A DNA stretch of 64,000 nt, taken from Thalia democratica. Lineage: Eukaryota. The translations under genes were made by a program, and so were the position numbers. The stretch lies in contig CBDBBG010000089.1 of the NCBI GenBank assembly GCA_965202585.1, forward strand, positions 1-64,000, given 5' to 3'. Below, in pieces: positions 18,812-62,132 of this stretch (position 1 is the stretch's first letter; the number at the start of each line of letters is the position of its first letter). The notes beneath the pieces are model-generated. The model worked only from the letters and a program-made list of their open reading frames with translations, did no database searches and was not told the origin of the DNA.

Positions 18812-19492
18812 TTAAACAAGTATCCACTGTCTCTTCTCAAAGGTATATCTACAGTTAGGACAAGTCTTATGATCAGCAAACCATCTTTCAATACAATTTT
18901 TACAAAACACGTGCTTTCCAGTGCAGTCGAGACGCACCATAGTCATTCCAACTTCAACATCTTCAAGACAAATCCCACATTCACCAGAGAATGACTCGTC
19001 GGCTTCAAATCGGTCAAATTCCTGGATCCTCTCCAAGCTGAGACCTCTCCTGCGGTTCTGAGCTACACGTGGTACGTTGTTTCCATGCTGCCCACTAGCG
19101 GTTATTTGATTATCGAACAGTTGTATCATCGACTGCATTTCATAGTTCAGTTCGATTTTTTCCTGCATGACGTCAGCCTGCTCCTGCAGCTCCCTTTCAA
19201 ACTGTTCGAGTTTGGCGCAGTCTTGTTCCAAACTTCTGATCACAGACAAATAAGATGATGATGATGATGTCATAAAGGAAAACATACTGTGTGAGTTTTC
19301 GTGAATTTTTCTTCTGTAGTACGCTATACTTGTTTGCTTTTCTATTTTTGTTCTTATGATACGATTTAGATAAAACCTTGTTAGTCGGGGCACAAGGTCC
19401 TCTAGAACGTGCCAGTTGTTGTATGACTCTAAAGTGAACCAATGATTGTAAAGCCGCTGAAGATCACGCTCTATTATAGTTTCAACAGTGAC
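18812..19492 (-). CDS. RING-finger protein (coiled-coil + C-terminal RING with C-x3-H spacing), probable E3 ligase; terminal exon, 5' start unresolved
   Basis: The frame is open upstream of the track GTG to an acceptor ttttcaag| at 19493/19492 (VTVETIIERDLQRLYNHWF...). RING: C-x2-C-x14-C-x3-H-x2-C-x2-C-x10-C-x2-C (CGICLEDVEVGMTMVRLDCTGKHVFCKNCIERWFADHKTCPNC). All eight ligands and the Trp are intact. Confidence 0.88.
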   Translation of the reverse strand, partial: VTVETIIERDLQRLYNHWFTLESYNNWHVLEDLVPRLTRFYLNRIIRTKIEKQTSIAYYRRKIHENSHSMFSFMTSSSSSYLSVIRSLEQDCAKLEQFERELQEQADVMQEKIELNYEMQSMIQLFDNQITASGQHGNNVPRVAQNRRRGLSLERIQEFDRFEADESFSGECGICLEDVEVGMTMVRLDCTGKHVFCKNCIERWFADHKTCPNCRYTFEKRQWILV

Positions 19493-32442: not shown

Positions 32443-33467
32443 TTAAATCATTGGGACCTTGAGGCAGCTGAATCTCTGAAAGTTTTTTATCTCCAATGAA
32501 GTTTTGAATGTAAAAAGATCGTTTTGCACATCATACTTGTGTAAATTAACTTTGTTGTTTTTCTCATTGAGAAAAAAAATGTTGTTACCAATGGCAACTA
32601 CCCGGTTTGGATTGTCAAGTCTATTACTATAAAACTCTGGTTTTGATATTCTTACCCATTTTGGAAGAGTGTTAATATACGTGAATTTTCTTGTGATACT
32701 ATCAAATACTTCTGAATAGTGACTACTACCTCCAATCATAAACATCTTGTTACTGACACTAATTGCAGAATGGTTATATCTTGGTGATAACATATCAGGA
32801 AAATAAGACCATTTATTTTCATGAAAATCATAACTCTCAATGGAATAGAGATTTATAATACTATAACGTGCAGTTTGTTTTATCCTACTACTGCCTGGAA
32901 AAGGAATGTTTGGAATATTTTTTCTTCTTGAACCCCCTGAAACAACTGTTTTGCCTTCAAAAACTGTACATGCTGATCCTTCCCTTCTTTCCATTATAGA
33001 TGCAATAGAAGTCCACTTGTTACTATCTTCGTTATAAAACCAAGAAGGCCTTTTGTACCATGTTCCATTAATGATAAAAACTTTTTGCATGAAAGAACAC
33101 ATTTCATAGTCTAGGTTTTTTTCTTCTAATAAATGTAACTTGGTGCAGGTTTTTGTAGAAAACGAATATTTTACAACAGACAAATTATTGTAATGTTCAA
33201 ACTTACCTGCAAAATAAGCCGTAGAACCACTAACAATTGCTTTACAATTGTATTTCGGTATAGGTAGACTAGGAAGATACATTTTTGTATCAAAGTTGTT
33301 CAACAAAAAATGCTTATGATTTGATACATCTCCGCTATAATTGACTTCACTGAACACACCAATACTAAATTCTTCCTGATCACAATATCTATTTTGATAC
33401 AAAACAGGAAACTGATCACTCAATTTTTTGCCAAGATTTTTGAAACTAGATACCATTTTTAAATATA
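32443..33467 (-). CDS. Kelch-repeat protein lacking BTB/BACK (orphan propeller exon or truncated gene)
   Basis: 337-aa ORF with Kelch motifs (RREGSACTVFEGKTVVSGG, IESYDFHENKWSYFPDMLSPRYNHSAISVSNKMFMIGG). The start NRYCDQEEFSI matches SRYCSQKKFNL after the BACK domain of the 54-kb gene, and the C-terminus SCLKVP matches SCVKFP. ATG at 33456; possible phase-1 acceptor caacag| at 33468/33467. Confidence 0.85.
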
Positions 33468-36830: not shown

Positions 36831-37660
36831 GAAAAATTATAAAACTAAGCTGATGTAATTTATCTAAATACTTTAAAAAAAACTTAAGTTGCATTAAATG
36901 TAAATTTAACCCGTTTAAATATTAATTTCGTATTAGTGTAAAACTGAACTTAAACATAAATTGAAACAACTTGGACATAAAATTAAAACAAATCTAAATA
37001 CAACTAAATGCTATTTGAAAATTATTTTAATTAAAGTAAAAAATTAGGTATTATAATATTGCAGAGGTTTAAGGAAACAAATTATAAAATTTAAGTTTTT
37101 TTTTTTTTAACCAACTTTTATATTTTTACTTTGGAGTTCATTGTCTTTATTTTACTAAGTCCGAATATCCACACTTAATTACAAGCTATCAAAGCAAAAA
37201 AAGAATTTAAAAGAATGTCTGATAGCAAAATAACTTTCAAAGACAAGTTAATTGATGACATTAAAGCAAAAATTTTTTTTTCTTGAAACTTAACTTACAA
37301 AAAGCTTATATAAAGGTTACAAAAAGCTTATATAACTCTAAAAGACCTGAACTAGGTTAATCGAAAGGTCTTTTTTAAACTACAATTTATATTTAATTTA
37401 GTGCAAAATTTTAGGATACCATCTTTAAACTTATCATTAGTCGTTAATATATGACAAGAATGAAAGTTAAATGTCAGTATTCAGTAAATTCAAGAAATTT
37501 TGAGTACTCAAAAAGATCGAGTATAAGTTGTTATTAATATTCAAAACTCTTTATTGAAATTAATCACGGTTTGTTTAAAAAAAAAAACTATAATTTTTTT
37601 AAGAAGTTACTAAACATAAAAGTTTGTAAGTATAATGTCTTTTATTGAATAATAAGATAA

Positions 37661-40456
37661 CTAGTTGTAACTAGAGCAACTAAAAGAAGCTAACGGGATA
37701 GGTAAACTTGGACCTTTTGACCAAACATCGTTTTCAATGTCATAAACCTCCACGGAATCACTCATTTGATTTCCGTTCAAAAAACCCCCGAAGACGAAAA
37801 TCTTGTTACCAAGTACACTGCATCCAAAGAACGAGCGTGCTAGGTTCATTTCAGCTACACAAGTGAACTGATTCGTCACGCTTGAGTAAACTTCAACTGA
37901 ACATGTTTCTTTATTCATATCAATACCGCCGATGACAAATATTTTTTTGTCGTGAACCACAGCCCTGTGACCGCTTCGTTTTTGAAGTAGCCTGGCGTCA
38001 GCTGCTGTCCATTTGTTCTCACCTAAATCGTACGTCTCAACCGTGTCCAGTAGATTCATGTTCGAACCACCACCGATTGCCCACACTTTATCTTGGTAAT
38101 ATGTCAACGCGAACGCCATTCTACTTGTGTTCATGCTGCAAACTTCGGTCAATTCGCCACTTTCCGCGCTGTAAACTTCACAATTCGCGGAACTTTCCAT
38201 CTTCTTATGAGCTCCTCCGGCCATAAAAATGCAACCGGCAAATGAGCACATCCCAAAAAGTTTTCTTCCGTTACGCATTGGTGGAACTGTCAACTTCTGA
38301 CCAACTGATATGACCTCATTATCGGATGATGTGCTGTCATTCCTAATACCTCCGAATAAATAAATGTTACCACCAATAGTAGTAGATTGATGATTGAACC
38401 TTGAAGAACTTAGTTTTGAGTGAAAATTATAAGTGTTTGTTTTGAAATCAAATATGTAAACAGCATTACTGTCTATGTAAGGTTCTGATCCGCTCTGTGA
38501 TTTTGTTGTTAATCCACCAGTTATTACTATACTGTTTCTATCATCAATACTTTGTATATTATGCACATCATCAATATTTTTTGTCTTTTTTTCTGTTTAT
38601 TTTAAATTATGTTTTATCATGTAGTTCAATGTTGATCTCAAATAAAGAAAAAAATATCAAATTGTTCTTAAATTATTTCATTAGTTGTTATCACTCTTTT
38701 TGAGTTAATGCTTTATAGTATTTCTATATTTGTATAAAACATATACAAAATCTAGAACAGTAATGATGTGATACTTAAACTTTTTAAATCGTCCTTAAAT
38801 ATGTCAATTAATCTTTATGATTTTTTGTCGTTACCTTAACTCGATATAAAAGTTGTTATACTTCAAGAGAAATCGAATTTTATGATTATTTACTCATAAT
38901 ATTCTTCTTTAGCAAACACGTTGAATATAAACTAAATAAAATAAACTTGAGTTTATAGTCAACTTGTTTGCTATAGAAGAATTTAAAAGTACTTCAAACG
39001 ATATAATGAGTACAAAATGAAATATTTGTTGATTTTTTATTAAGTACAATAGTTTTTAGATATGGTAATGAAATTTTTAAAAAGGATCAAAAAATAAAAC
39101 TAAACTAGTTACTGTAAACAAACCATTGAGCTGGTCATTTTCTTCTTTTGTTAACTTTTTCTTTCTTTCATCTTTAAAGTGGTCAACTTTTACAGTTTTC
39201 TTTAAGCTTTTTATACTATTCAGTTTTGCTAAGATATTTTTATTGTGTATCTGCAACACTTTATAGTTTTCTTTTAAACATTCAGTATCTTTTTGAGCGT
39301 TCTTCAGAGAAGCTTTAAATGTTGTCAGGTCAAACTGAAATTTTTTGTTTTGTTCTTTTAGAAAAATGTTCTCCTTCCCAAACTTGATTATCTTTTCATT
39401 TATTAACTTAAAAGTTTTATTTTCGCAATTGCTCATGTCATTGAGGTTTTCTTTTACTTCGTGTAAAATACTCTTTTTTGGATATTTATCGAGTAAACTT
39501 ATCTTCAGTTTGTCATCGAAACTTTGCAGTTTATTGTTCTTTCCATCAAAGTCATTTTCGTTACTGTTATTGAAGTCTGTGAAAACTGTTTTGGAAAAAT
39601 AGAAAATATATTAATAATCAAAAGTCATTTTAAGCACAAAAAACTTCCTTACTTATAAAAATATTATTGTTAATATTATAAACAAAAACATCTATTATAT
39701 ATCATTAGTAATCAATAAATAGGTGTGAGGTACTAAAAGCATGTTAAGTAAAAACTAAAAACAAGTATTTTTTATATAAATTACAAAATCTATTAAACCT
39801 TTGTTTTCAAAAGATTCTAAACATCTGGAACAGTCATCATTACAAGAATAATAAGTTTCATCGCTACAACAACTATCACTACATGAATCATTAAAGTTTT
39901 CGCAAGAAAGATTGTCATTACGATAATCTTTCTGAATTTGCTTTTCATACTTGACATTTAACATTTCGGGTACGTTTTCATTGCCATTATCAAATTTTCT
40001 TATTTCAGCTAACAAGGTATTGTTCTCTGATGTGATTAGTTCGCTTTTTATTTTCAAGTCTTTAATATCTTTTTGGAAGCATTGTAGAAACACTTTAACA
40101 CTTTTAAGGTTGTTTTGATAACTTGTATTAGTTTCTTTTAGACTTGTGTTTTCTTTGTCTAGTTTCTTAATCATATTTAGAAATATTTCTCTTTTTTCTC
40201 TTTCGTAGTCTAAAATTTCTTTGATAAATTCTTTTGTATCATTTGAACAGCAACTATAATTAAGTTCTTTATAGACATTTGGGAATATGGTCTTTACAAC
40301 GTTAATGTTTTCAGCATTACATGTTGGACACCTTTTGTTAATCTGCATTGCACTTTCTAAACAAGATTTATGGTAAACGTGACCACATTGCGTAACAGAA
40401 ACATCAGTGTTTACTGAAAACAAATTATCTAAACATATACCGCATTCAAAATCCAT
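37661..40456 (-). CDS. Three-exon RING-H2 / coiled-coil / six-Kelch protein, 680 aa (exons 40456-39799, 39576-39124, 38592-37661)
   Basis: Exon 1: AAAATG, RING-H2 CGIC-x15-CGHVYHKSC-x10-CPTC resembling TRAIP, then heptad-rich helix. Intron 1: G|gtttaa..tttcacag|AC. Exon 2: Lys/Glu/Asn-rich coiled-coil, open upstream of the track ATG. Intron 2: G|gtttgt..taaacag|AA. Exon 3: six GG-containing Kelch repeats. Exon lengths 658+453+932=2043 nt =681 codons with no internal stop; AATAAA about 15 nt after the stop. Confidence 0.75.
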
Positions 40457-40691
40457 TTTGTTTGATTTTTTAATATATTTCCTTAAAAAATATTAATTTG
40501 TTAAAAATAAAGCTTTTCATTTTATTTTAAATTTAAAATACTAGAGGTTAAAGTATTTATTTAAAAATAATGTATTTATTTTACATATCTTCTTATATTG
40601 GCTAAGCAGAATTCAAGACTACTTTAAATGCACTAATCAAAGATAAAAATAATGTTAAACTACAAATATAACATATACTATTCTATTCAAT

Positions 40692-41098
40692 CAAGGTTTC
40701 CCAATTTGTTTTTTTTAATTACTCTTTTTATAGATTTCATAAAAAACTACTATTAAAAACGCATAAGACCTTTTTTTTTATCTTCATTATCAACTCCAAA
40801 TATCTGGTGTTAGTGTGTAAGTTTCAAGTTTTGACCTTGTGGCTATCCCTTATACAGCTTTTGTCTCCCTAAATTTCATAAATTTTTTCTTTGAAATCTA
40901 GTATAAGTTTCAACGTTACCTTTTAAAATCGCCCATGACCAGTTTATTATTGCTTTTGATCATCAATTTCAGAATGCCAAGTTTAAATCTCAATTTATGA
41001 CCGCATAGACCCCCCTTTATCATCTTTGCTGCTCATGGCCCCCAAAATTTCTATAATGGCTTCGAAGGGGGCAACTTGGCCTAGTTTGGGAAACCCTG
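40692..41098. mobile_element. hAT-type MITE (407 bp)
   Basis: TIRs caaggtttcccaa / ttgggaaaccctg; 8-bp flanks tattcaat / tattaaat (7/8). Confidence 0.8.
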
Positions 41099-41940
41099 TA
41101 TTAAATTCTTAAAAGTTGGGAATAATTTTAAAAACTGAATAGTGTTGAAAACTAACTTATGGTGTAAGGTTATAGTTTAGTGTATAACACACTAAAAACC
41201 ATAACTAAATGATATTTAAAGACATTCTATTCTATGCTACCTGTAAAAGCTAGGAATGACTTTTGATGGTTATGTTTATATATTTAAGAACATACCAAAC
41301 AATAAAAAATAAAGGATGTAATACTTTAGAAAATATTGTTAATTTTGTCAAAACTTTTACACAAAAGTTAAATCTAATAGGAATATACTATTAACTATAA
41401 CAATGTTTAATTAAATTAAGAACTATCTGCTTGGAATTAAACTAAAAAATCAATTTAAACTAACAAACATTAATTAAAAAAGAACTTTACAATGAACAAT
41501 ATAATAACAAAAAAGTTCAGTTATGGAACTAATCTCGAAGCTCTTGACTGACTAGAATATCACTGCAATCACACTGTGGCTAGTTTTTATAGCTATATCT
41601 TAAAAATGTAAACTTTTTTCAGATCAACTTGCTTTCTGGTTGAATGGTTTTATAATATTTGATGTTCAACTAACATGTTACAGTTAAACAAGTATTCCAT
41701 TAGACTTCCTCTTCCTCTTATTTTCAAATAGAATCTCACTCTAAACTTACTCTTCCTTTTTGCTAGAAGAGAATCACATTTTACTCTTCTTCATTCTTTT
41801 TCCTAGGGACAATGAAGAAAAAAAGTAATTTTTATTAACAAACAATGCAAATCCCCTAGTTCCAAAATGTTACACTAAAAGTTACAGCTAAAAGAAAATA
41901 GAAAACTATATAGTATAAAAATGTTCAATCAGTTTTAAAA

Positions 41941-54344: not shown

Positions 54345-55756
54345 GTAAAACAAAGATAGAAGAAATTGAACTAGCAGTAGCTCTAAATCGCAATAAGTTG
54401 ATACTGAGTGAAGGTGAAAGTTTAAAAATTTCGGATTTTATAAAAGAAAAAGTGAACAAAGACAATGTTCTGACATTTCATAGTTTAGGAAAGCTTTACA
54501 AACTACCCACTACTTTTAAGTCATCCTTGCTTTGTATAGAACGTTGTTTTCCAATGGTAGTTGAAACTCAAAACTTTTTGTATTTAGATTTTAGTATTGT
54601 TGCAAATATACTTGATAGTTCTGAATTAAATATTCACTCAGAAATTGAAATATTTAATGCAGTTATTGCTTGGTTGGAACACAACAGTGAAGAACGTATC
54701 AAATATGCAAAACAGTTGTTACTAAAATTCCGTTATAGATTATTATCAGAAGATGCTTTAAAACACATATTTAATTGTAATTCAATTTTTACTAAAAACC
54801 ATGAGTGTATTAAAACATTAAAAAAAGTAGTACTGAACCAGAAAAATTTTTATTCGGCAAAAACAGATAAAATCTACACAAGTAGGTATTGTAGCCAAAA
54901 AAAGTTTAACCTATTATTATATGGTTTCAGCCCTGATGTGTATGGACCTGTAACATATGTACATCAATTTAATGGAAACACATTGAAGTGTTTGAAAGAT
55001 GTTTCTTTAAATACAATTGCGAGAAGAAATTTTGAAGTTGTTTGTACGAAAGGAGAGGTTTACATGTTTGGTGGTCGTAATAACAGTGGTGCTGGACGTT
55101 TATCAATGTCTGTTGTAAAATTGTCACCTCCTACTAATACATGGAATGTAGTAGCTAAAATGTGCGATGAACGTGAATTCTTTTGTGCTTGTGCATTTAT
55201 GGATAAAATATTTATTTTGGGGGCTTTTTACTATAAAAACAATAAGGTAACTAGTTCCTGTTTTCAATTTGATATAAGACAAGACTCTTTTGAAGAAGTT
55301 TCTAGAATGCGTCAACGAAGAATGCATGCAGCATGTGCAGTGTTTCAAGGAAATATTGTTGTTTCTGGTGGAATGAATTATAGTAATAATTTTGGTTTGG
55401 AATCAGTAGAATCATATGATGTAATTTCCAACAAGTGGTCACCAATGCCTAATACGACAAATTTGTACTTTAATCACAACTTAGTTGTGGTAAAAGATAA
55501 ATTGTTTGTTATTGGATATGATCGAAACACTTGTGAAGTTTTTGACAATGTTTCTAAGAATTTTGTTTCTCTTAAGCCTCCACCCAGTATTTGTTTAAAT
55601 AAATCTGTGGCAATAGGTAACAAAATCGTAGTTTTTCAAGAAAAAAGACTTTCAATAATGTGTTACGATGTTAATAAAGATGAATGGAATGAAGAACCAT
55701 GTGAAATAACGAAAAATCTTTATTATTTGTCTTGTGTGAAGTTTCCTTTGTATTAA
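54345..55756 (+). CDS. BACK + Kelch protein (KLHL-like), large terminal exon; N-terminus in upstream exon(s)
   Basis: BACK: ERCFPMVVETQNFLYLDFSIVANILDSSELNIHSEIEIFNAVIAWLEHNSEER. Kelch: GEVYMFGG, NIVVSGG, VESYDVISNKWSPMP. The frame is open upstream of the track TTG to an acceptor tttattag|GT at 54344/54345; no ATG near the start. Confidence 0.88.
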
Positions 55757-57208: not shown

Positions 57209-57308
57209 NNNNNNNNNNNNNNNNNNNNNNNNNNNNNNNNNNNNNNNNNNNNNNNNNNNNNNNNNNNNNNNNNNNNNNNNNNNNNNNNNNNNNNNNNNNN
57301 NNNNNNNN
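57209..57308. other. Assembly gap (100 N)
   Basis: Run of exactly 100 n, probably a placeholder of unknown true size. Confidence 0.99.
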
Positions 57309-61475: not shown

Positions 61476-62132
61476 ATGTCATATAAATCAATCCTAATCA
61501 TTAGAACTAGTTTAAACAGTTCAAGTATACGCTTAGAAACTAATATAGTCAAAGATGACGGCTTGGCTTGTTTCAAAAATACTAGTTGGTACATGTCTGA
61601 TGAAGAAACCATTTTCATAGAACAAGAATATGACTTTGACTTCCTACATAGTTTCGGCTTGGAACACATGAAACAGGAAATAATCAGAGTTATCAATCAG
61701 TTGAGAGAAAACAATCGAAACAACATTCATCAATCGGTTGAAATTCCCGTGACGTCAAGAGAACTTTCCGAACCACACAGATCGTGCAAAATGAATCAAA
61801 ACGAAGCAACAGGGGAAAATCAAGTTTGCCAGTCTGAGCTACAACAAAAGTTGTCAGCTCTCGACGAAGAAAGTGAGTTGTTAAAACCATTTAACGAAAA
61901 CAAATGCTCAGTTTGCCTGAGTAGCTACAAAGAGATTCTTGATGACAAATTTCATGTAGTCGTTCCATCTTGCGGACACCCTTTGTGTTGTAGCTGTGCT
62001 GATAGAATTTTAGGTAATGCAAAGAAAAAGTGTCCACAGTGCAGGGAAATCATTAAACTTGAATCTTTTAATCCAATGAAATTTAATAGAGATTTAGGGA
62101 TAGACACACAAGATCAAAAGCTATTCTTATAG
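61476..62132 (+). CDS. Intronless C3HC4 RING-finger protein, 218 aa, unrecognised N-terminal domain
   Basis: AAAAATG start; RING C-x2-C-x18-C-x1-H-x2-C-x2-C-x11-C-x2-C (CSVCLSSYKEILDDKFHVVVPSCGHPLCCSCADRILGNAKKKCPQC); AATAAA at ~62203. Confidence 0.9.
   Translation: MSYKSILIIRTSLNSSSIRLETNIVKDDGLACFKNTSWYMSDEETIFIEQEYDFDFLHSFGLEHMKQEIIRVINQLRENNRNNIHQSVEIPVTSRELSEPHRSCKMNQNEATGENQVCQSELQQKLSALDEESELLKPFNENKCSVCLSSYKEILDDKFHVVVPSCGHPLCCSCADRILGNAKKKCPQCREIIKLESFNPMKFNRDLGIDTQDQKLFL

What the first reader, a model, noticed from the sequence alone, without database searches (positions are those of the whole stretch)
37661..40456. Hidden spliced RING-H2 + coiled-coil + six-Kelch fusion: a candidate single-chain E3 ligase
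Seen: three same-strand ORFs join through two GT-AG phase-1 introns (39798-39577, 39123-38593) into a stop-free 2043-nt CDS. Both acceptors sit just inside the nearest upstream in-frame stop. Known: animal Kelch propellers usually reach E2 enzymes through BTB-BACK/Cullin3, while RING-coiled-coil-propeller ligases (TRIM-NHL) use NHL repeats; the N-terminus resembles TRAIP (RING-H2 then coiled-coil). Inference: exon shuffling has produced a cullin-independent RING-CC-Kelch ligase, which I do not recognise as a described family. The usual RING Trp after the sixth ligand is Ala (CLESA), so E2 binding may be altered. Both donors (gtttaa, gtttgt) are non-optimal.
Basis: partly seen in the sequence, partly recalled or inferred. 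Interest (0 to 1): 0.85.

Follow-up and report, generated by a model that had tools for sequence, protein, structure and literature searches.

The report
Expanded RING–coiled-coil–Kelch ligase gene family
The three ORFs are one real three-exon gene for a RING + coiled-coil + six-bladed Kelch protein, probably a self-contained ubiquitin ligase. It is one of about 50 close and at least 150 total copies in a tunicate genome, and the copies differ most on the substrate-binding face.

Summary
Observation confirmed. Exons 40456-39799, 39576-39124 and 38592-37661 (minus strand) join through two GT-AG phase-1 introns into a stop-free 2043-nt CDS (680 aa).

No RNA data could be found, so the model rests on comparison with paralogues:
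- In 39 close copies both donors are GT in 39/39. The acceptors are AG in 38/39 and 37/39.
- Exon indels come in multiples of three; intron indels do not.
- All three exons have dN/dS below 1 (0.26-0.55).

The protein has an N-terminal RING-H2 with all eight zinc ligands invariant across the family. An 85-residue helix follows, predicted to form a parallel dimer, then a second helical exon, then a complete KLHL-type six-bladed Kelch propeller. No BTB, BACK or B-box domain was detected.

It is not a one-off fusion. The genome is a tunicate's by its mitochondrial code. It holds about 50 close and at least 150 total copies, in tandem arrays and scattered, and roughly 40% of the close copies are broken. 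The BC and DA loops of the upper Kelch face evolve at omega about 1.2, against 0.3 for the scaffold.

The only relatives found elsewhere are unnamed marine-metagenome fragments. Other first-stage notes of this scan flagged the same family on other pieces of this genome.

Most likely it is a cullin-independent dimeric E3 repertoire with diversified substrate specificity. Expression and activity are untested.

The parts
39799..40456 (-). Exon 1 (codons 1-219 plus one base): start ATG, RING-H2, long helix, acidic Cys/Ser-rich tail
   Evidence: ORF and translation. ATG conserved in 38/39 paralogues and donor GT in 39/39. dN/dS is 0.26 for the RING and 0.38 for the coiled coil.
40319..40444 (-). 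RING-H2 zinc finger, residues 5-46: C-x2-C-x15-C-x-H-x2-H-x2-C-x10-C-x2-C
   Evidence: Pfam zf-RING_2 E 2.4e-11. Best solved matches are RNF4, Pirh2 and Arkadia. All 8 ligands are invariant, and Ile7 and Pro44 are conserved, in 25 family members down to 38% identity.
39989..40243 (-). Single long alpha-helix, residues 72-156; predicted parallel dimeric coiled coil
   Evidence: AlphaFold2 gives helix 72-156 at pLDDT 87-97. The homodimer model of residues 1-160 scored 0.37, best of 3 controls 0.00; it is in register with heptad-spaced contacts from 78 to 155.
39800..39988 (-). Disordered acidic Cys/Ser/Asp-rich tail of exon 1, residues 157-219
   Evidence: pLDDT 32-48. Present only in the close subfamily and repeated three times in metagenome relative P0157.
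39577..39798 (-). Intron 1, phase 1, GT...AG, 222 nt, 19% G+C
   Evidence: GT in 39/39 and AG in 38/39 paralogues. Indels are not in threes and identity is 74-83%, against 93-95% in exon 1. G+C.
39124..39576 (-). Exon 2 (phase 1-1, 151 codons): second helical, coiled-coil-like segment, 32% identical to the exon-1 helix
   Evidence: Open frame. dN/dS 0.44. Indels of 18 and 21 nt in intact copies. Similarity to the exon-1 helix. About 50 close copies in the genome. Homologous to the coiled-coil part of P0127, where it is fused to Kelch in one ORF.
38593..39123 (-). Intron 2, phase 1, GT...AG, 531 nt, 21.5% G+C
   Evidence: GT in 39/39 and AG in 37/39 paralogues. The donor motif ATG|GTTTGT also occurs in 53-54%-identity paralogues L019 and L021.
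37661..38592 (-). Exon 3: short linker, six-bladed Kelch propeller and stop codon TAG (37661-37663)
   Evidence: Pfam Kelch_1 E 1.9e-46. The first in-frame ATG is at exon-3 residue 105, so the exon cannot encode a whole propeller on its own. dN/dS 0.55.
37667..38533 (-). Kelch beta-propeller, exon-3 residues 20-308 (full-length 391-679), six blades closed by the C-terminal strand
   Evidence: AlphaFold2 pLDDT 90.5, pTM 0.88. Foldseek TM about 0.9 to KLHL12, KEAP1 and KLHL3 Kelch domains. phmmer hits KEAP1, KLHL12 and KLHL20 at E 1e-30 to 1e-35. The variable BC and DA loops are at full-length residues 411, 456, 479-482, 498-502, 529, 546-551, 577, 594-597, 625 and 641-644.
37641..37646 (-). AATAAA polyadenylation-signal-like hexamer 15 nt after the stop
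   Evidence: Read directly from the sequence. Not conserved in most paralogues.
37314..41850 (-). Approximate extent of the duplicated unit shared by paralogues: about 1.4 kb upstream, the gene, and about 0.35 kb downstream
   Evidence: The blastn coverage profile drops sharply at 37314. Upstream identity of 72-94% ends near 41850-41900. There is no other ORF of 45 aa or more inside the homologous upstream part, 40457-41850.

Best explanation
This locus is an intact member of a large, lineage-restricted family of three-exon genes in a tunicate genome. Each gene encodes a single-chain RING E3 ubiquitin ligase.

Proposed mechanism:
- The N-terminal RING-H2 recruits a ubiquitin-charged E2.
- The long helix that follows, probably together with its duplicate in exon 2, forms a parallel coiled-coil dimer that brings two RINGs side by side.
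- The C-terminal KLHL-type six-bladed Kelch propeller binds substrate through its upper face (BC and DA loops).
- The Kelch receptor is therefore wired directly to a RING, without BTB-BACK, Cullin-3 or RBX1.

The family grows and decays by duplication of a 4.5-kb unit, giving tandem arrays, scattered copies and many pseudogenes. The copies differ mainly on the substrate-binding face, so the family most likely works as a repertoire of ligases with different targets. This evolutionary pattern resembles TRIM or F-box/MATH-BTB expansions, which are linked to defence or conflict.

Shown here: the gene structure, the domains, the family size, purifying selection on all exons, and fast evolution of the upper face.

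Inferred: transcription and splicing, E3 activity, dimerisation, and any biological role.
For: Gene model:
- The spliced frame is stop-free.
- Splice dinucleotides and the ATG are conserved in 37-39 of 39 close copies, and 22 copies keep the full open frame.
- Exon indels are in threes and intron indels are arbitrary.
- dN/dS is 0.26, 0.38, 0.44 and 0.55 for the RING, helix, exon 2 and Kelch.
- Of 10 sampled copies at 38-55% identity, 9 have the RING exon and the Kelch exon in the same order within 5 kb, and 7 of those also show the middle exon.
- A marine metagenome contig (L030) has the same three ORFs in order, and relative P0127 has the coiled coil and Kelch in one ORF.
- Exon 3 has no in-frame ATG before blade 3.

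Domains:
- RING-H2 by Pfam, with RNF4 as the best solved match.
- Zinc ligands, Ile7 and Pro44 are invariant or nearly invariant.
- Helix 72-156 is confidently modelled.
- The homodimer test passed: score 0.37, best of 3 controls 0.00. The mark was reached by 21 of 30 proteins solved as pairs of one chain and 0 of 23 solved as single chains. The runs agree in at least 75% of contacts and partner pLDDT is about 72.
- The Kelch model has pLDDT 90.5 and TM about 0.9 to KLHL12 and KEAP1.
- Pfam reported no BTB, BACK or B-box hit for any of the three exons.

Family: at least 150 scored matches of 1006 candidates for exon 1, and 78 matches for exon 2.

Diversification:
- BC and DA loops carry 3.3-4.1 non-synonymous changes per codon, against 1.3 elsewhere, with equal synonymous rates (Mann-Whitney p = 4e-9 versus p = 0.69).
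- Omega is 1.22 (CI 0.87-1.78) in those loops against 0.30 (0.22-0.41) in the rest.
- In solved KLHL structures these loops form the substrate pocket (PMC3597819).
Against: - There is no transcript evidence. No RNA run holds the locus, and the two runs I laid on it are DNA contigs with no splice joints. All database relatives are metagenome ORF fragments.
- The residue after the last RING cysteine, the 'linchpin' position that is Arg in RNF4, is Asn in this copy and its close subfamily. That could mean low intrinsic activity.
- The usual Trp is absent.
- Omega of about 1.2 in the loops has a confidence interval that includes 1. Relaxed constraint on loops cannot be separated from positive selection with these counts, and gene conversion among paralogues could distort the tree-based counts.
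- About 40% of the close copies are broken.
- The dimer prediction is a model score, and its calibration for eukaryotic proteins with no solved relative is weak.
Confidence: 0.65

Rival explanations
1. The gene model and protein are right, but the RING is not a ubiquitin E3. It could be a catalytically weak or inactive scaffold, a SUMO-type ligase like RNF212/Zip3, or a decoy or adaptor that dimerises with active paralogues.
For: The linchpin position is Asn in this subfamily, while most distant paralogues have Arg or Lys. No member has the canonical Trp. RNF212, Zip3 and HEI10 are among the fold neighbours of exon 1.
Against: All eight zinc ligands and the E2-contact Ile7 and Pro44 are conserved. 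The RING is the most constrained part of the protein (dN/dS 0.26). RNF4 and Pirh2 are active E3s that lack the Trp. RNF212-type proteins have no propeller.
Confidence: 0.12
2. The family is a selfishly amplified or decaying 4.5-kb repeat, possibly carried by a mobile element or derived from a virus. It is little or not expressed and has no organismal function. The open frames persist only because the copies are young.
For: The duplicated unit has sharp shared boundaries. There are tens of copies at 85-95% DNA identity on at least six chromosomes plus unplaced contigs, and about 40% are pseudogenes. An exact 19-nt direct repeat sits at the 3' boundary. No RNA evidence was found. One feature-based Atlas neighbour of exon 1 is a giant-virus RING cluster at 0.91.
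Against: dN/dS is well below 1 in every exon, while dS is 0.11-0.20 between copies. That requires long-term selection on the protein. Subfamilies at 38-55% identity still keep open frames, RING ligands and Kelch. The unit contains no transposase, integrase or other ORF and has no terminal repeats. It has ordinary GT-AG introns and host-like base composition.
Confidence: 0.1
3. The ORFs belong to separate or alternative products. One would be a 233-aa RING-coiled-coil protein ending in the retained intron 1. A Kelch-only protein would come from its own promoter. On this reading the full fusion is rare or never made.
For: The exon-1 ORF continues 14 codons into intron 1 to a stop. Metagenome gene callers report the pieces separately. 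No junction reads are available.
Against: Exon 3 lacks an in-frame ATG before blade 3, and exon 2 has none before codon 44 of its frame. Splice sites are conserved in 37-39 of 39 copies, while the alternative AG is not. The order and spacing of the three parts hold across the whole superfamily. P0127 fuses the coiled coil and Kelch in one ORF. Prokaryote-style gene callers cannot join exons, so the separate calls say nothing.
Confidence: 0.05

Closest known systems
COP1, RFWD3 and PRP19 (RING or U-box, then coiled coil, then WD40 propeller)
   Same: The overall layout and presumed logic match: an N-terminal E2-recruiting finger, a dimerising coiled coil and a C-terminal beta-propeller that binds substrate degrons, with no cullin needed for the RING. 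COP1 and RFWD3 are fold neighbours of exon 1, and COP1 appears among sequence hits of the RING.
   Different: The propeller here is a six-bladed KLHL-type Kelch, not a seven-bladed WD40. There is no sequence relationship beyond the generic RING. Those genes are single-copy and conserved, whereas this is a family of tens to hundreds of copies restricted to one lineage.
BTB-BACK-Kelch (KLHL/KBTBD) substrate adaptors of Cullin-3 ligases, e.g. KEAP1, KLHL12, KLHL20
   Same: The Kelch domain is of this type. phmmer gives E 1e-30 to 1e-35 and the fold matches at TM about 0.9 with six blades. The variable residues lie in the BC and DA loops, which form the KLHL substrate pocket (PMC3597819).
   Different: Pfam reported no BTB, BACK or 3-box, so there is no route to Cullin-3. 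A RING-H2 and coiled coil take their place. Human Kelch proteins are classed as KLHL, KBTBD or KLHDC, and the review describes them as cullin-RING substrate receptors (PMC12035522).
TRIM ligases, especially TRIM-NHL (TRIM2/3/32/71) and the expanded TRIM5/finTRIM groups
   Same: Both have a RING, a coiled coil and a C-terminal substrate-binding domain (a six-bladed propeller in TRIM-NHL). Both show lineage-specific tandem expansion with a fast-evolving recognition surface (my knowledge for the TRIMs; for this family).
   Different: No B-box is detected. The coiled coil is predicted to be parallel and in register, whereas TRIM coiled coils are antiparallel (my knowledge). The propeller is Kelch, not NHL or SPRY.
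TRAIP (RING-H2 followed by a long coiled coil)
   Same: The RING-H2 sits at the extreme N-terminus and is followed directly by a long helix. TRAIP is a weak fold neighbour (E 7e-4 to 1.5e-3, TM 0.33), and a 'TRAIP-like' cluster scores 0.88 in the Atlas feature search.
   Different: No sequence search singles out TRAIP. TRAIP keeps the RING Trp and has no propeller (my knowledge). The resemblance is shared with many RING-coiled-coil proteins.

Membership tests
RING-H2 E3 ligases | C3H2C3 zinc-ligand pattern with canonical spacing | tested here: met
   C5, C8, C24, H26, H29, C32, C43 and C46. Pfam zf-RING_2 E 2.4e-11. Invariant in 25 family members.
RING-H2 E3 ligases | E2-contact residues: hydrophobic after Cys1, Pro before the last Cys pair, Trp after ligand 6 | tested here: inconclusive
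   Ile7 and Pro44 are conserved. The Trp position is Ala36, and no family member has Trp there. RNF4 has Ser and Pirh2 has Met at that position.
RING-H2 E3 ligases | Linchpin Arg/Lys after the last Cys, which primes E2~Ub | tested here: inconclusive
   Asn47 in this copy and its close subfamily. Arg, Lys or Gln in most distant paralogues and metagenome relatives.
RING-H2 E3 ligases | Ubiquitin-transfer activity | not testable with these tools
   Needs an in vitro auto-ubiquitination or E2~Ub discharge assay.
BTB-BACK-Kelch (KLHL/KBTBD) | N-terminal BTB domain, with BACK/3-box, that binds Cullin-3 | tested here: not met
   The Pfam scan of all three exons reported only RING families for exon 1 and nothing significant for exon 2.
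BTB-BACK-Kelch (KLHL/KBTBD) | Six-bladed Kelch propeller of Kelch_1 type | tested here: met
   Kelch_1 E 1.9e-46. Model pLDDT 90.5. TM 0.86-0.93 to KLHL12 and KEAP1.
TRIM (RING-B-box-coiled coil) | B-box zinc finger between the RING and the coiled coil | tested here: not met
   No B-box hit in Pfam. Residues 50-71 are a short linker leading straight into helix 72-156.
TRIM (RING-B-box-coiled coil) | Antiparallel dimeric coiled coil | tested here: not met
   The predicted dimer is parallel and in register (103 with 103, 99 with 99). This is a prediction only.
COP1/RFWD3-type RING-coiled coil-WD40 | C-terminal WD40 propeller | tested here: not met
   The propeller is Kelch and Pfam gives no WD40 hit. 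The RING-helix part is a fold neighbour only.
TRAIP orthologues | Specific sequence similarity beyond the RING, and no propeller | tested here: not met
   Only generic RING hits in Pfam and PDB searches. Foldseek E about 1e-3 and TM 0.33. A Kelch propeller is present.

The most novel reading that the evidence does not exclude
Pelagic tunicates carry a previously undescribed class of cullin-independent Kelch ligases: RING-H2, parallel coiled coil and Kelch, in hundreds of copies. The diversifying upper propeller face would act as a germline-encoded recognition repertoire. It could restrict viruses or other parasites, or take part in self/non-self recognition. It would thus fill the niche that expanded TRIM families fill in vertebrates.
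Probability: 0.25. Interest if true: 0.8.

Novelty: new variant of a known kind. Interest (0 to 1): 0.6.

Why it matters
Kelch propellers are among the commonest substrate receptors of ubiquitin ligases. In the described systems they reach the E2 through a cullin scaffold: BTB with CUL3, the BC-box with CUL2/5, or the F-box with CUL1.

A family that fuses a KLHL-type Kelch directly to a RING through a dimerising coiled coil would show that this receptor can work in the simpler COP1/TRIM-like format. It would be a natural example of a compact Kelch-based degrader.

The scale of the expansion matters too. Together with the birth-and-death pattern and the concentration of amino-acid change on the substrate-binding face, it points to an arms-race or recognition function. 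Chordate invertebrates lack adaptive immunity, so the family is a concrete candidate for studies of tunicate innate immunity or allorecognition.

For annotation, the result also shows that hundreds of 'orphan' RING, coiled-coil and Kelch ORFs in this genome, and in marine metagenomes, belong to single spliced genes.

Tried and rejected
- **RNA evidence.** Two run searches found no RNA run. Runs X1 and X2, laid on the locus, are DNA contigs that cover the introns and show no joints at the proposed junctions. The question stays open; this is not evidence against splicing.
- **Full-length annotated homologues.** The spliced protein has no reference, so I searched it in pieces rather than typing it in. 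The Kelch exon against 1.8 billion representatives gave giant multi-Kelch proteins plus short unnamed fragments. Exon 1, and a coiled-coil+Kelch profile whose length window covers proteins of about 680 aa, gave only ENA metagenome fragments. The best named hit was a Hydractinia KLHL20 at 25% identity. Atlas feature searches showed no RING+Kelch cluster.
- **Literature.** Searches for a RING-Kelch family, for chaetognath or tunicate Kelch expansions, and for Kelch superfamily classifications found no description. An InterPro/CDART architecture query could not be run.
- **Splice sites in divergent paralogues.** Enumeration in 38-55%-identity copies gave too many GT/AG combinations in this AT-rich DNA to be decisive.
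- **Mobile-element signatures.** No terminal inverted or long direct repeats, and no extra ORF in the unit.
- **Species.** My early guess of a chaetognath (nine large scaffolds) was rejected once the mitochondrial code was read: AGA/AGG code for Gly. The species itself could not be named.
- **The 17 'hot sites' (omega 4.0).** These were chosen after seeing the data and are not used as a test.
Full report
**1. The observation**

The window is 25% G+C. On the minus strand, three ORFs lie at 40456-39755, 39436-39077 and 38566-37661.
- exon 1: 40456-39799
- intron 1: 39798-39577 (GTTTAA...CACAG)
- exon 2: 39576-39124
- intron 2: 39123-38593 (GTTTGT...AAACAG)
- exon 3: 38592-37661

Both introns are phase 1. 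The joined CDS is 2043 nt and 680 codons, with no stop before the terminal TAG. At this base composition about 8.8% of random codons are stops, so such a frame is not a chance event (about 1e-27 by my arithmetic).

Pfam finds a RING (zf-RING_2, residues 4-47, E 2.4e-11) in exon 1 and Kelch_1 (E 1.9e-46) in exon 3. Exon 2 has no significant domain.

**2. Is it one gene?**

No transcript data could be obtained. Two run searches returned no RNA run. The two best holders are DNA contigs that cover the introns and show no joint at the proposed junctions. I therefore tested the model by comparison with paralogues.

Exon 1 has at least 150 six-frame matches in the window's own 802-Mb genome (1006 first-look candidates). 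About 45 of them are 84-91% identical over the whole exon. Exon 2, which has no generic domain, has 78 matches, about 50 of them close.

I fetched 38 close copies and aligned them with the window:
- Donor 1 is GT in 39/39 and donor 2 is GT in 39/39.
- Acceptor 1 is AG in 38/39 and acceptor 2 is AG in 37/39.
- The ATG is kept in 38/39.
- In the seven copies compared segment by segment, exon indels in the intact copies are 3, 18 or 21 nt. Intron indels are of any length.
- In the same set, exon 1 is 93-95% identical against 74-83% for intron 1.
- Twenty-two of the 39 copies keep a complete open spliced frame. The rest carry frameshifts or stops.

Among the 22 intact copies, dN/dS is 0.26 (RING), 0.38 (first helix), 0.44 (exon 2) and 0.55 (Kelch), at dS of 0.11-0.20. 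All three exons have therefore been selected as protein.

Further support comes from more distant sequences:
- Of ten sampled copies at only 38-55% identity, nine have the RING exon and the Kelch exon in the same order within 5 kb. Seven of those also show the middle exon.
- A Tara Oceans marine-metagenome contig (L030) has the same three ORFs in order.
- A more distant metagenome relative (P0127, 488 aa) carries the coiled coil and the Kelch domain in one uninterrupted ORF.
- Exon 3 has no in-frame ATG before its residue 105, so it cannot make a whole propeller alone.

I put the gene model at about 0.9, short of certainty only because no RNA was seen.

**3. The protein**

*RING.* The pattern is C5-x2-C8-x15-C24-x-H26-x2-H29-x2-C32-x10-C43-x2-C46. 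All eight ligands are invariant in 25 family members down to 38% identity. Ile7 and Pro44 are conserved. The best solved matches are RNF4, Pirh2 and Arkadia.

It aligns with Ser in RNF4 and Met in Pirh2, both active ligases, so its absence is not a warning sign.

The residue after the last Cys is the linchpin position, Arg in RNF4. It is Asn in this subfamily but Arg or Lys in most distant members. This is the one feature that might lower activity.

*Helices.* AlphaFold2 models a RING fold, one 85-residue helix (72-156, pLDDT 87-97) and a disordered acidic Cys/Ser-rich tail.

A homodimer of residues 1-160 passed the complex test:
- The score was 0.37, and the best of 3 controls was 0.00.
- The mark was reached by 21 of 30 proteins solved as pairs of one chain and by 0 of 23 solved as single chains.
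- The runs agree in at least 75% of contacts, and partner pLDDT is about 72.
- The interface is a parallel, in-register coiled coil.
- This supports dimerisation but does not show it. The tool's calibration for eukaryotic proteins with no solved relative is weak.

Exon 2 is 32% identical to the exon-1 helix, which suggests an internal duplication.

*Kelch.* The model (pLDDT 90.5, pTM 0.88) is a closed six-bladed propeller. It matches KLHL12, KEAP1 and KLHL3 at TM about 0.9, and phmmer hits them at E 1e-30 to 1e-35. Pfam reported no BTB, BACK or B-box for any exon.

**4. Family, genome and evolution**

The mitochondrial COX1 of this assembly reads canonically only if AGA/AGG code for Gly, TGA for Trp and ATA for Met. 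For example, the Gly of FFGHPEVY is an AGA codon. This is the ascidian code, which is used throughout tunicates (PMC7047913). Family fragments occur in marine metagenomes from several studies, so the host is a marine tunicate, possibly a pelagic one. I could not name the species.

Copies lie in tandem arrays, for example C5:9.46-10.07 Mb, C2:68.8-70.0 Mb and C6:17.5-18.6 Mb. Others are scattered on other chromosomes. The shared unit runs from about 37314 to about 41850 of the window, roughly 4.5 kb. It has no other ORF and no terminal repeats.

Within the propeller, parsimony counts on the tree of 22 intact copies give:
- BC and DA loops: 3.3-4.1 non-synonymous changes per codon.
- Rest of the propeller: 1.3 per codon.
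- Synonymous rates do not differ (Mann-Whitney p = 4e-9 for non-synonymous, p = 0.69 for synonymous).

Pairwise omega is 1.22 (bootstrap CI 0.87-1.78) for these loops and 0.30 (0.22-0.41) for the rest. The most changeable positions recur at the same place in successive blades (482, 529, 577, 625 and 456, 501, 551, 597, 644). In solved KLHL structures, the DA and BC loops of the upper face form the substrate pocket (PMC3597819).

The pattern fits diversification of substrate specificity on a conserved scaffold. With these counts I cannot separate positive selection from relaxed constraint.

**5. Mechanism and comparison**

The most likely reading is a dimeric, single-chain RING E3 whose Kelch domain binds the substrate directly, without Cullin-3.

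In layout it works like COP1, RFWD3 or PRP19 (finger, coiled coil, WD40), which are fold neighbours of exon 1, and like TRIM-NHL. By the tests in the membership table it belongs to none of them:
- It has no WD40, no B-box and no BTB.
- Its coiled coil is predicted to be parallel.
- It shows no TRAIP-specific similarity.

Human Kelch proteins are classed as KLHL, KBTBD and KLHDC and are described as cullin-RING substrate receptors (PMC12035522).

I found no annotated protein with this architecture. That covers a search of 5.8 billion proteins, limited by its word filter and length window. It also covers the Atlas feature searches and the literature searches. A proper architecture query of InterPro/CDART was not possible, so the novelty claim is provisional. 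I rate the finding as a new variant of a known kind.

**6. Rivals**

- An inactive or SUMO-type RING (0.12).
- A selfish or decaying repeat with no function (0.10). This is contradicted by dN/dS well below 1 and by old, still-intact subfamilies.
- Separate RING-only and Kelch-only products (0.05).

First-stage notes of this scan flagged the same family on other pieces of this genome, one of them proposing a hypervariable substrate face. I tested that idea independently here on a different set of copies.

**7. Verdict**

Expression, ligase activity and biological role remain untested.

Noticed in passing
G000:C1833 (L062:1501-2817); also C4:56.84-56.94 Mb and C757:31.3-32.1 kb: The mitochondrial COX1 uses the ascidian code (AGA/AGG = Gly, TGA = Trp, ATA = Met), so the genome is a tunicate's. 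Several broken COX1 copies with many stops lie in nuclear contigs and look like nuclear mitochondrial insertions.
   Followed up: partly
window 18812-19393 (-), 32443-33456 (-), 54398-55756 (+), 61476-62132 (+): The same 64-kb window holds four other ubiquitin-system-like ORFs: two with C-terminal RING fingers, a weak Kelch ORF and a BACK+Kelch ORF that is probably part of a BTB-Kelch gene. None is a close member of the family studied (28% identity or less in Kelch). Their exon structures were not worked out.
   Followed up: partly
window 37295-37313 and 37317-37335: An exact 19-nt direct repeat (TTACAAAAAGCTTATATAA), with copies 3 nt apart, sits exactly on the 3' boundary (about 37314) of the 4.5-kb unit shared by the paralogues. 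It may mark the duplication junction.
   Followed up: no
window 40475-40490 (minus strand, about 25 nt upstream of the ATG): A T-tract followed by AAG is conserved upstream of the start codon in the paralogues. In a tunicate this could be a spliced-leader trans-splice acceptor.
   Followed up: no
window 39221-39475 versus 40001-40294: The helix of exon 1 and exon 2 are about 32% identical at protein level (the same cross-hits appear in paralogues). This suggests exon 2 arose by duplication of the coiled-coil segment.
   Followed up: partly
P0157 (marine metagenome, 285 aa) versus window 39800-39900: The acidic Cys/Ser-rich motif at the end of exon 1 (SCNDDCS.C.E..EN) is present once here but three times in tandem in a 74%-identical metagenome relative. 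This tail therefore varies in repeat number.
   Followed up: no
window 57209-57308: A run of 100 N (assembly gap or masked stretch). Left untouched.
   Followed up: no
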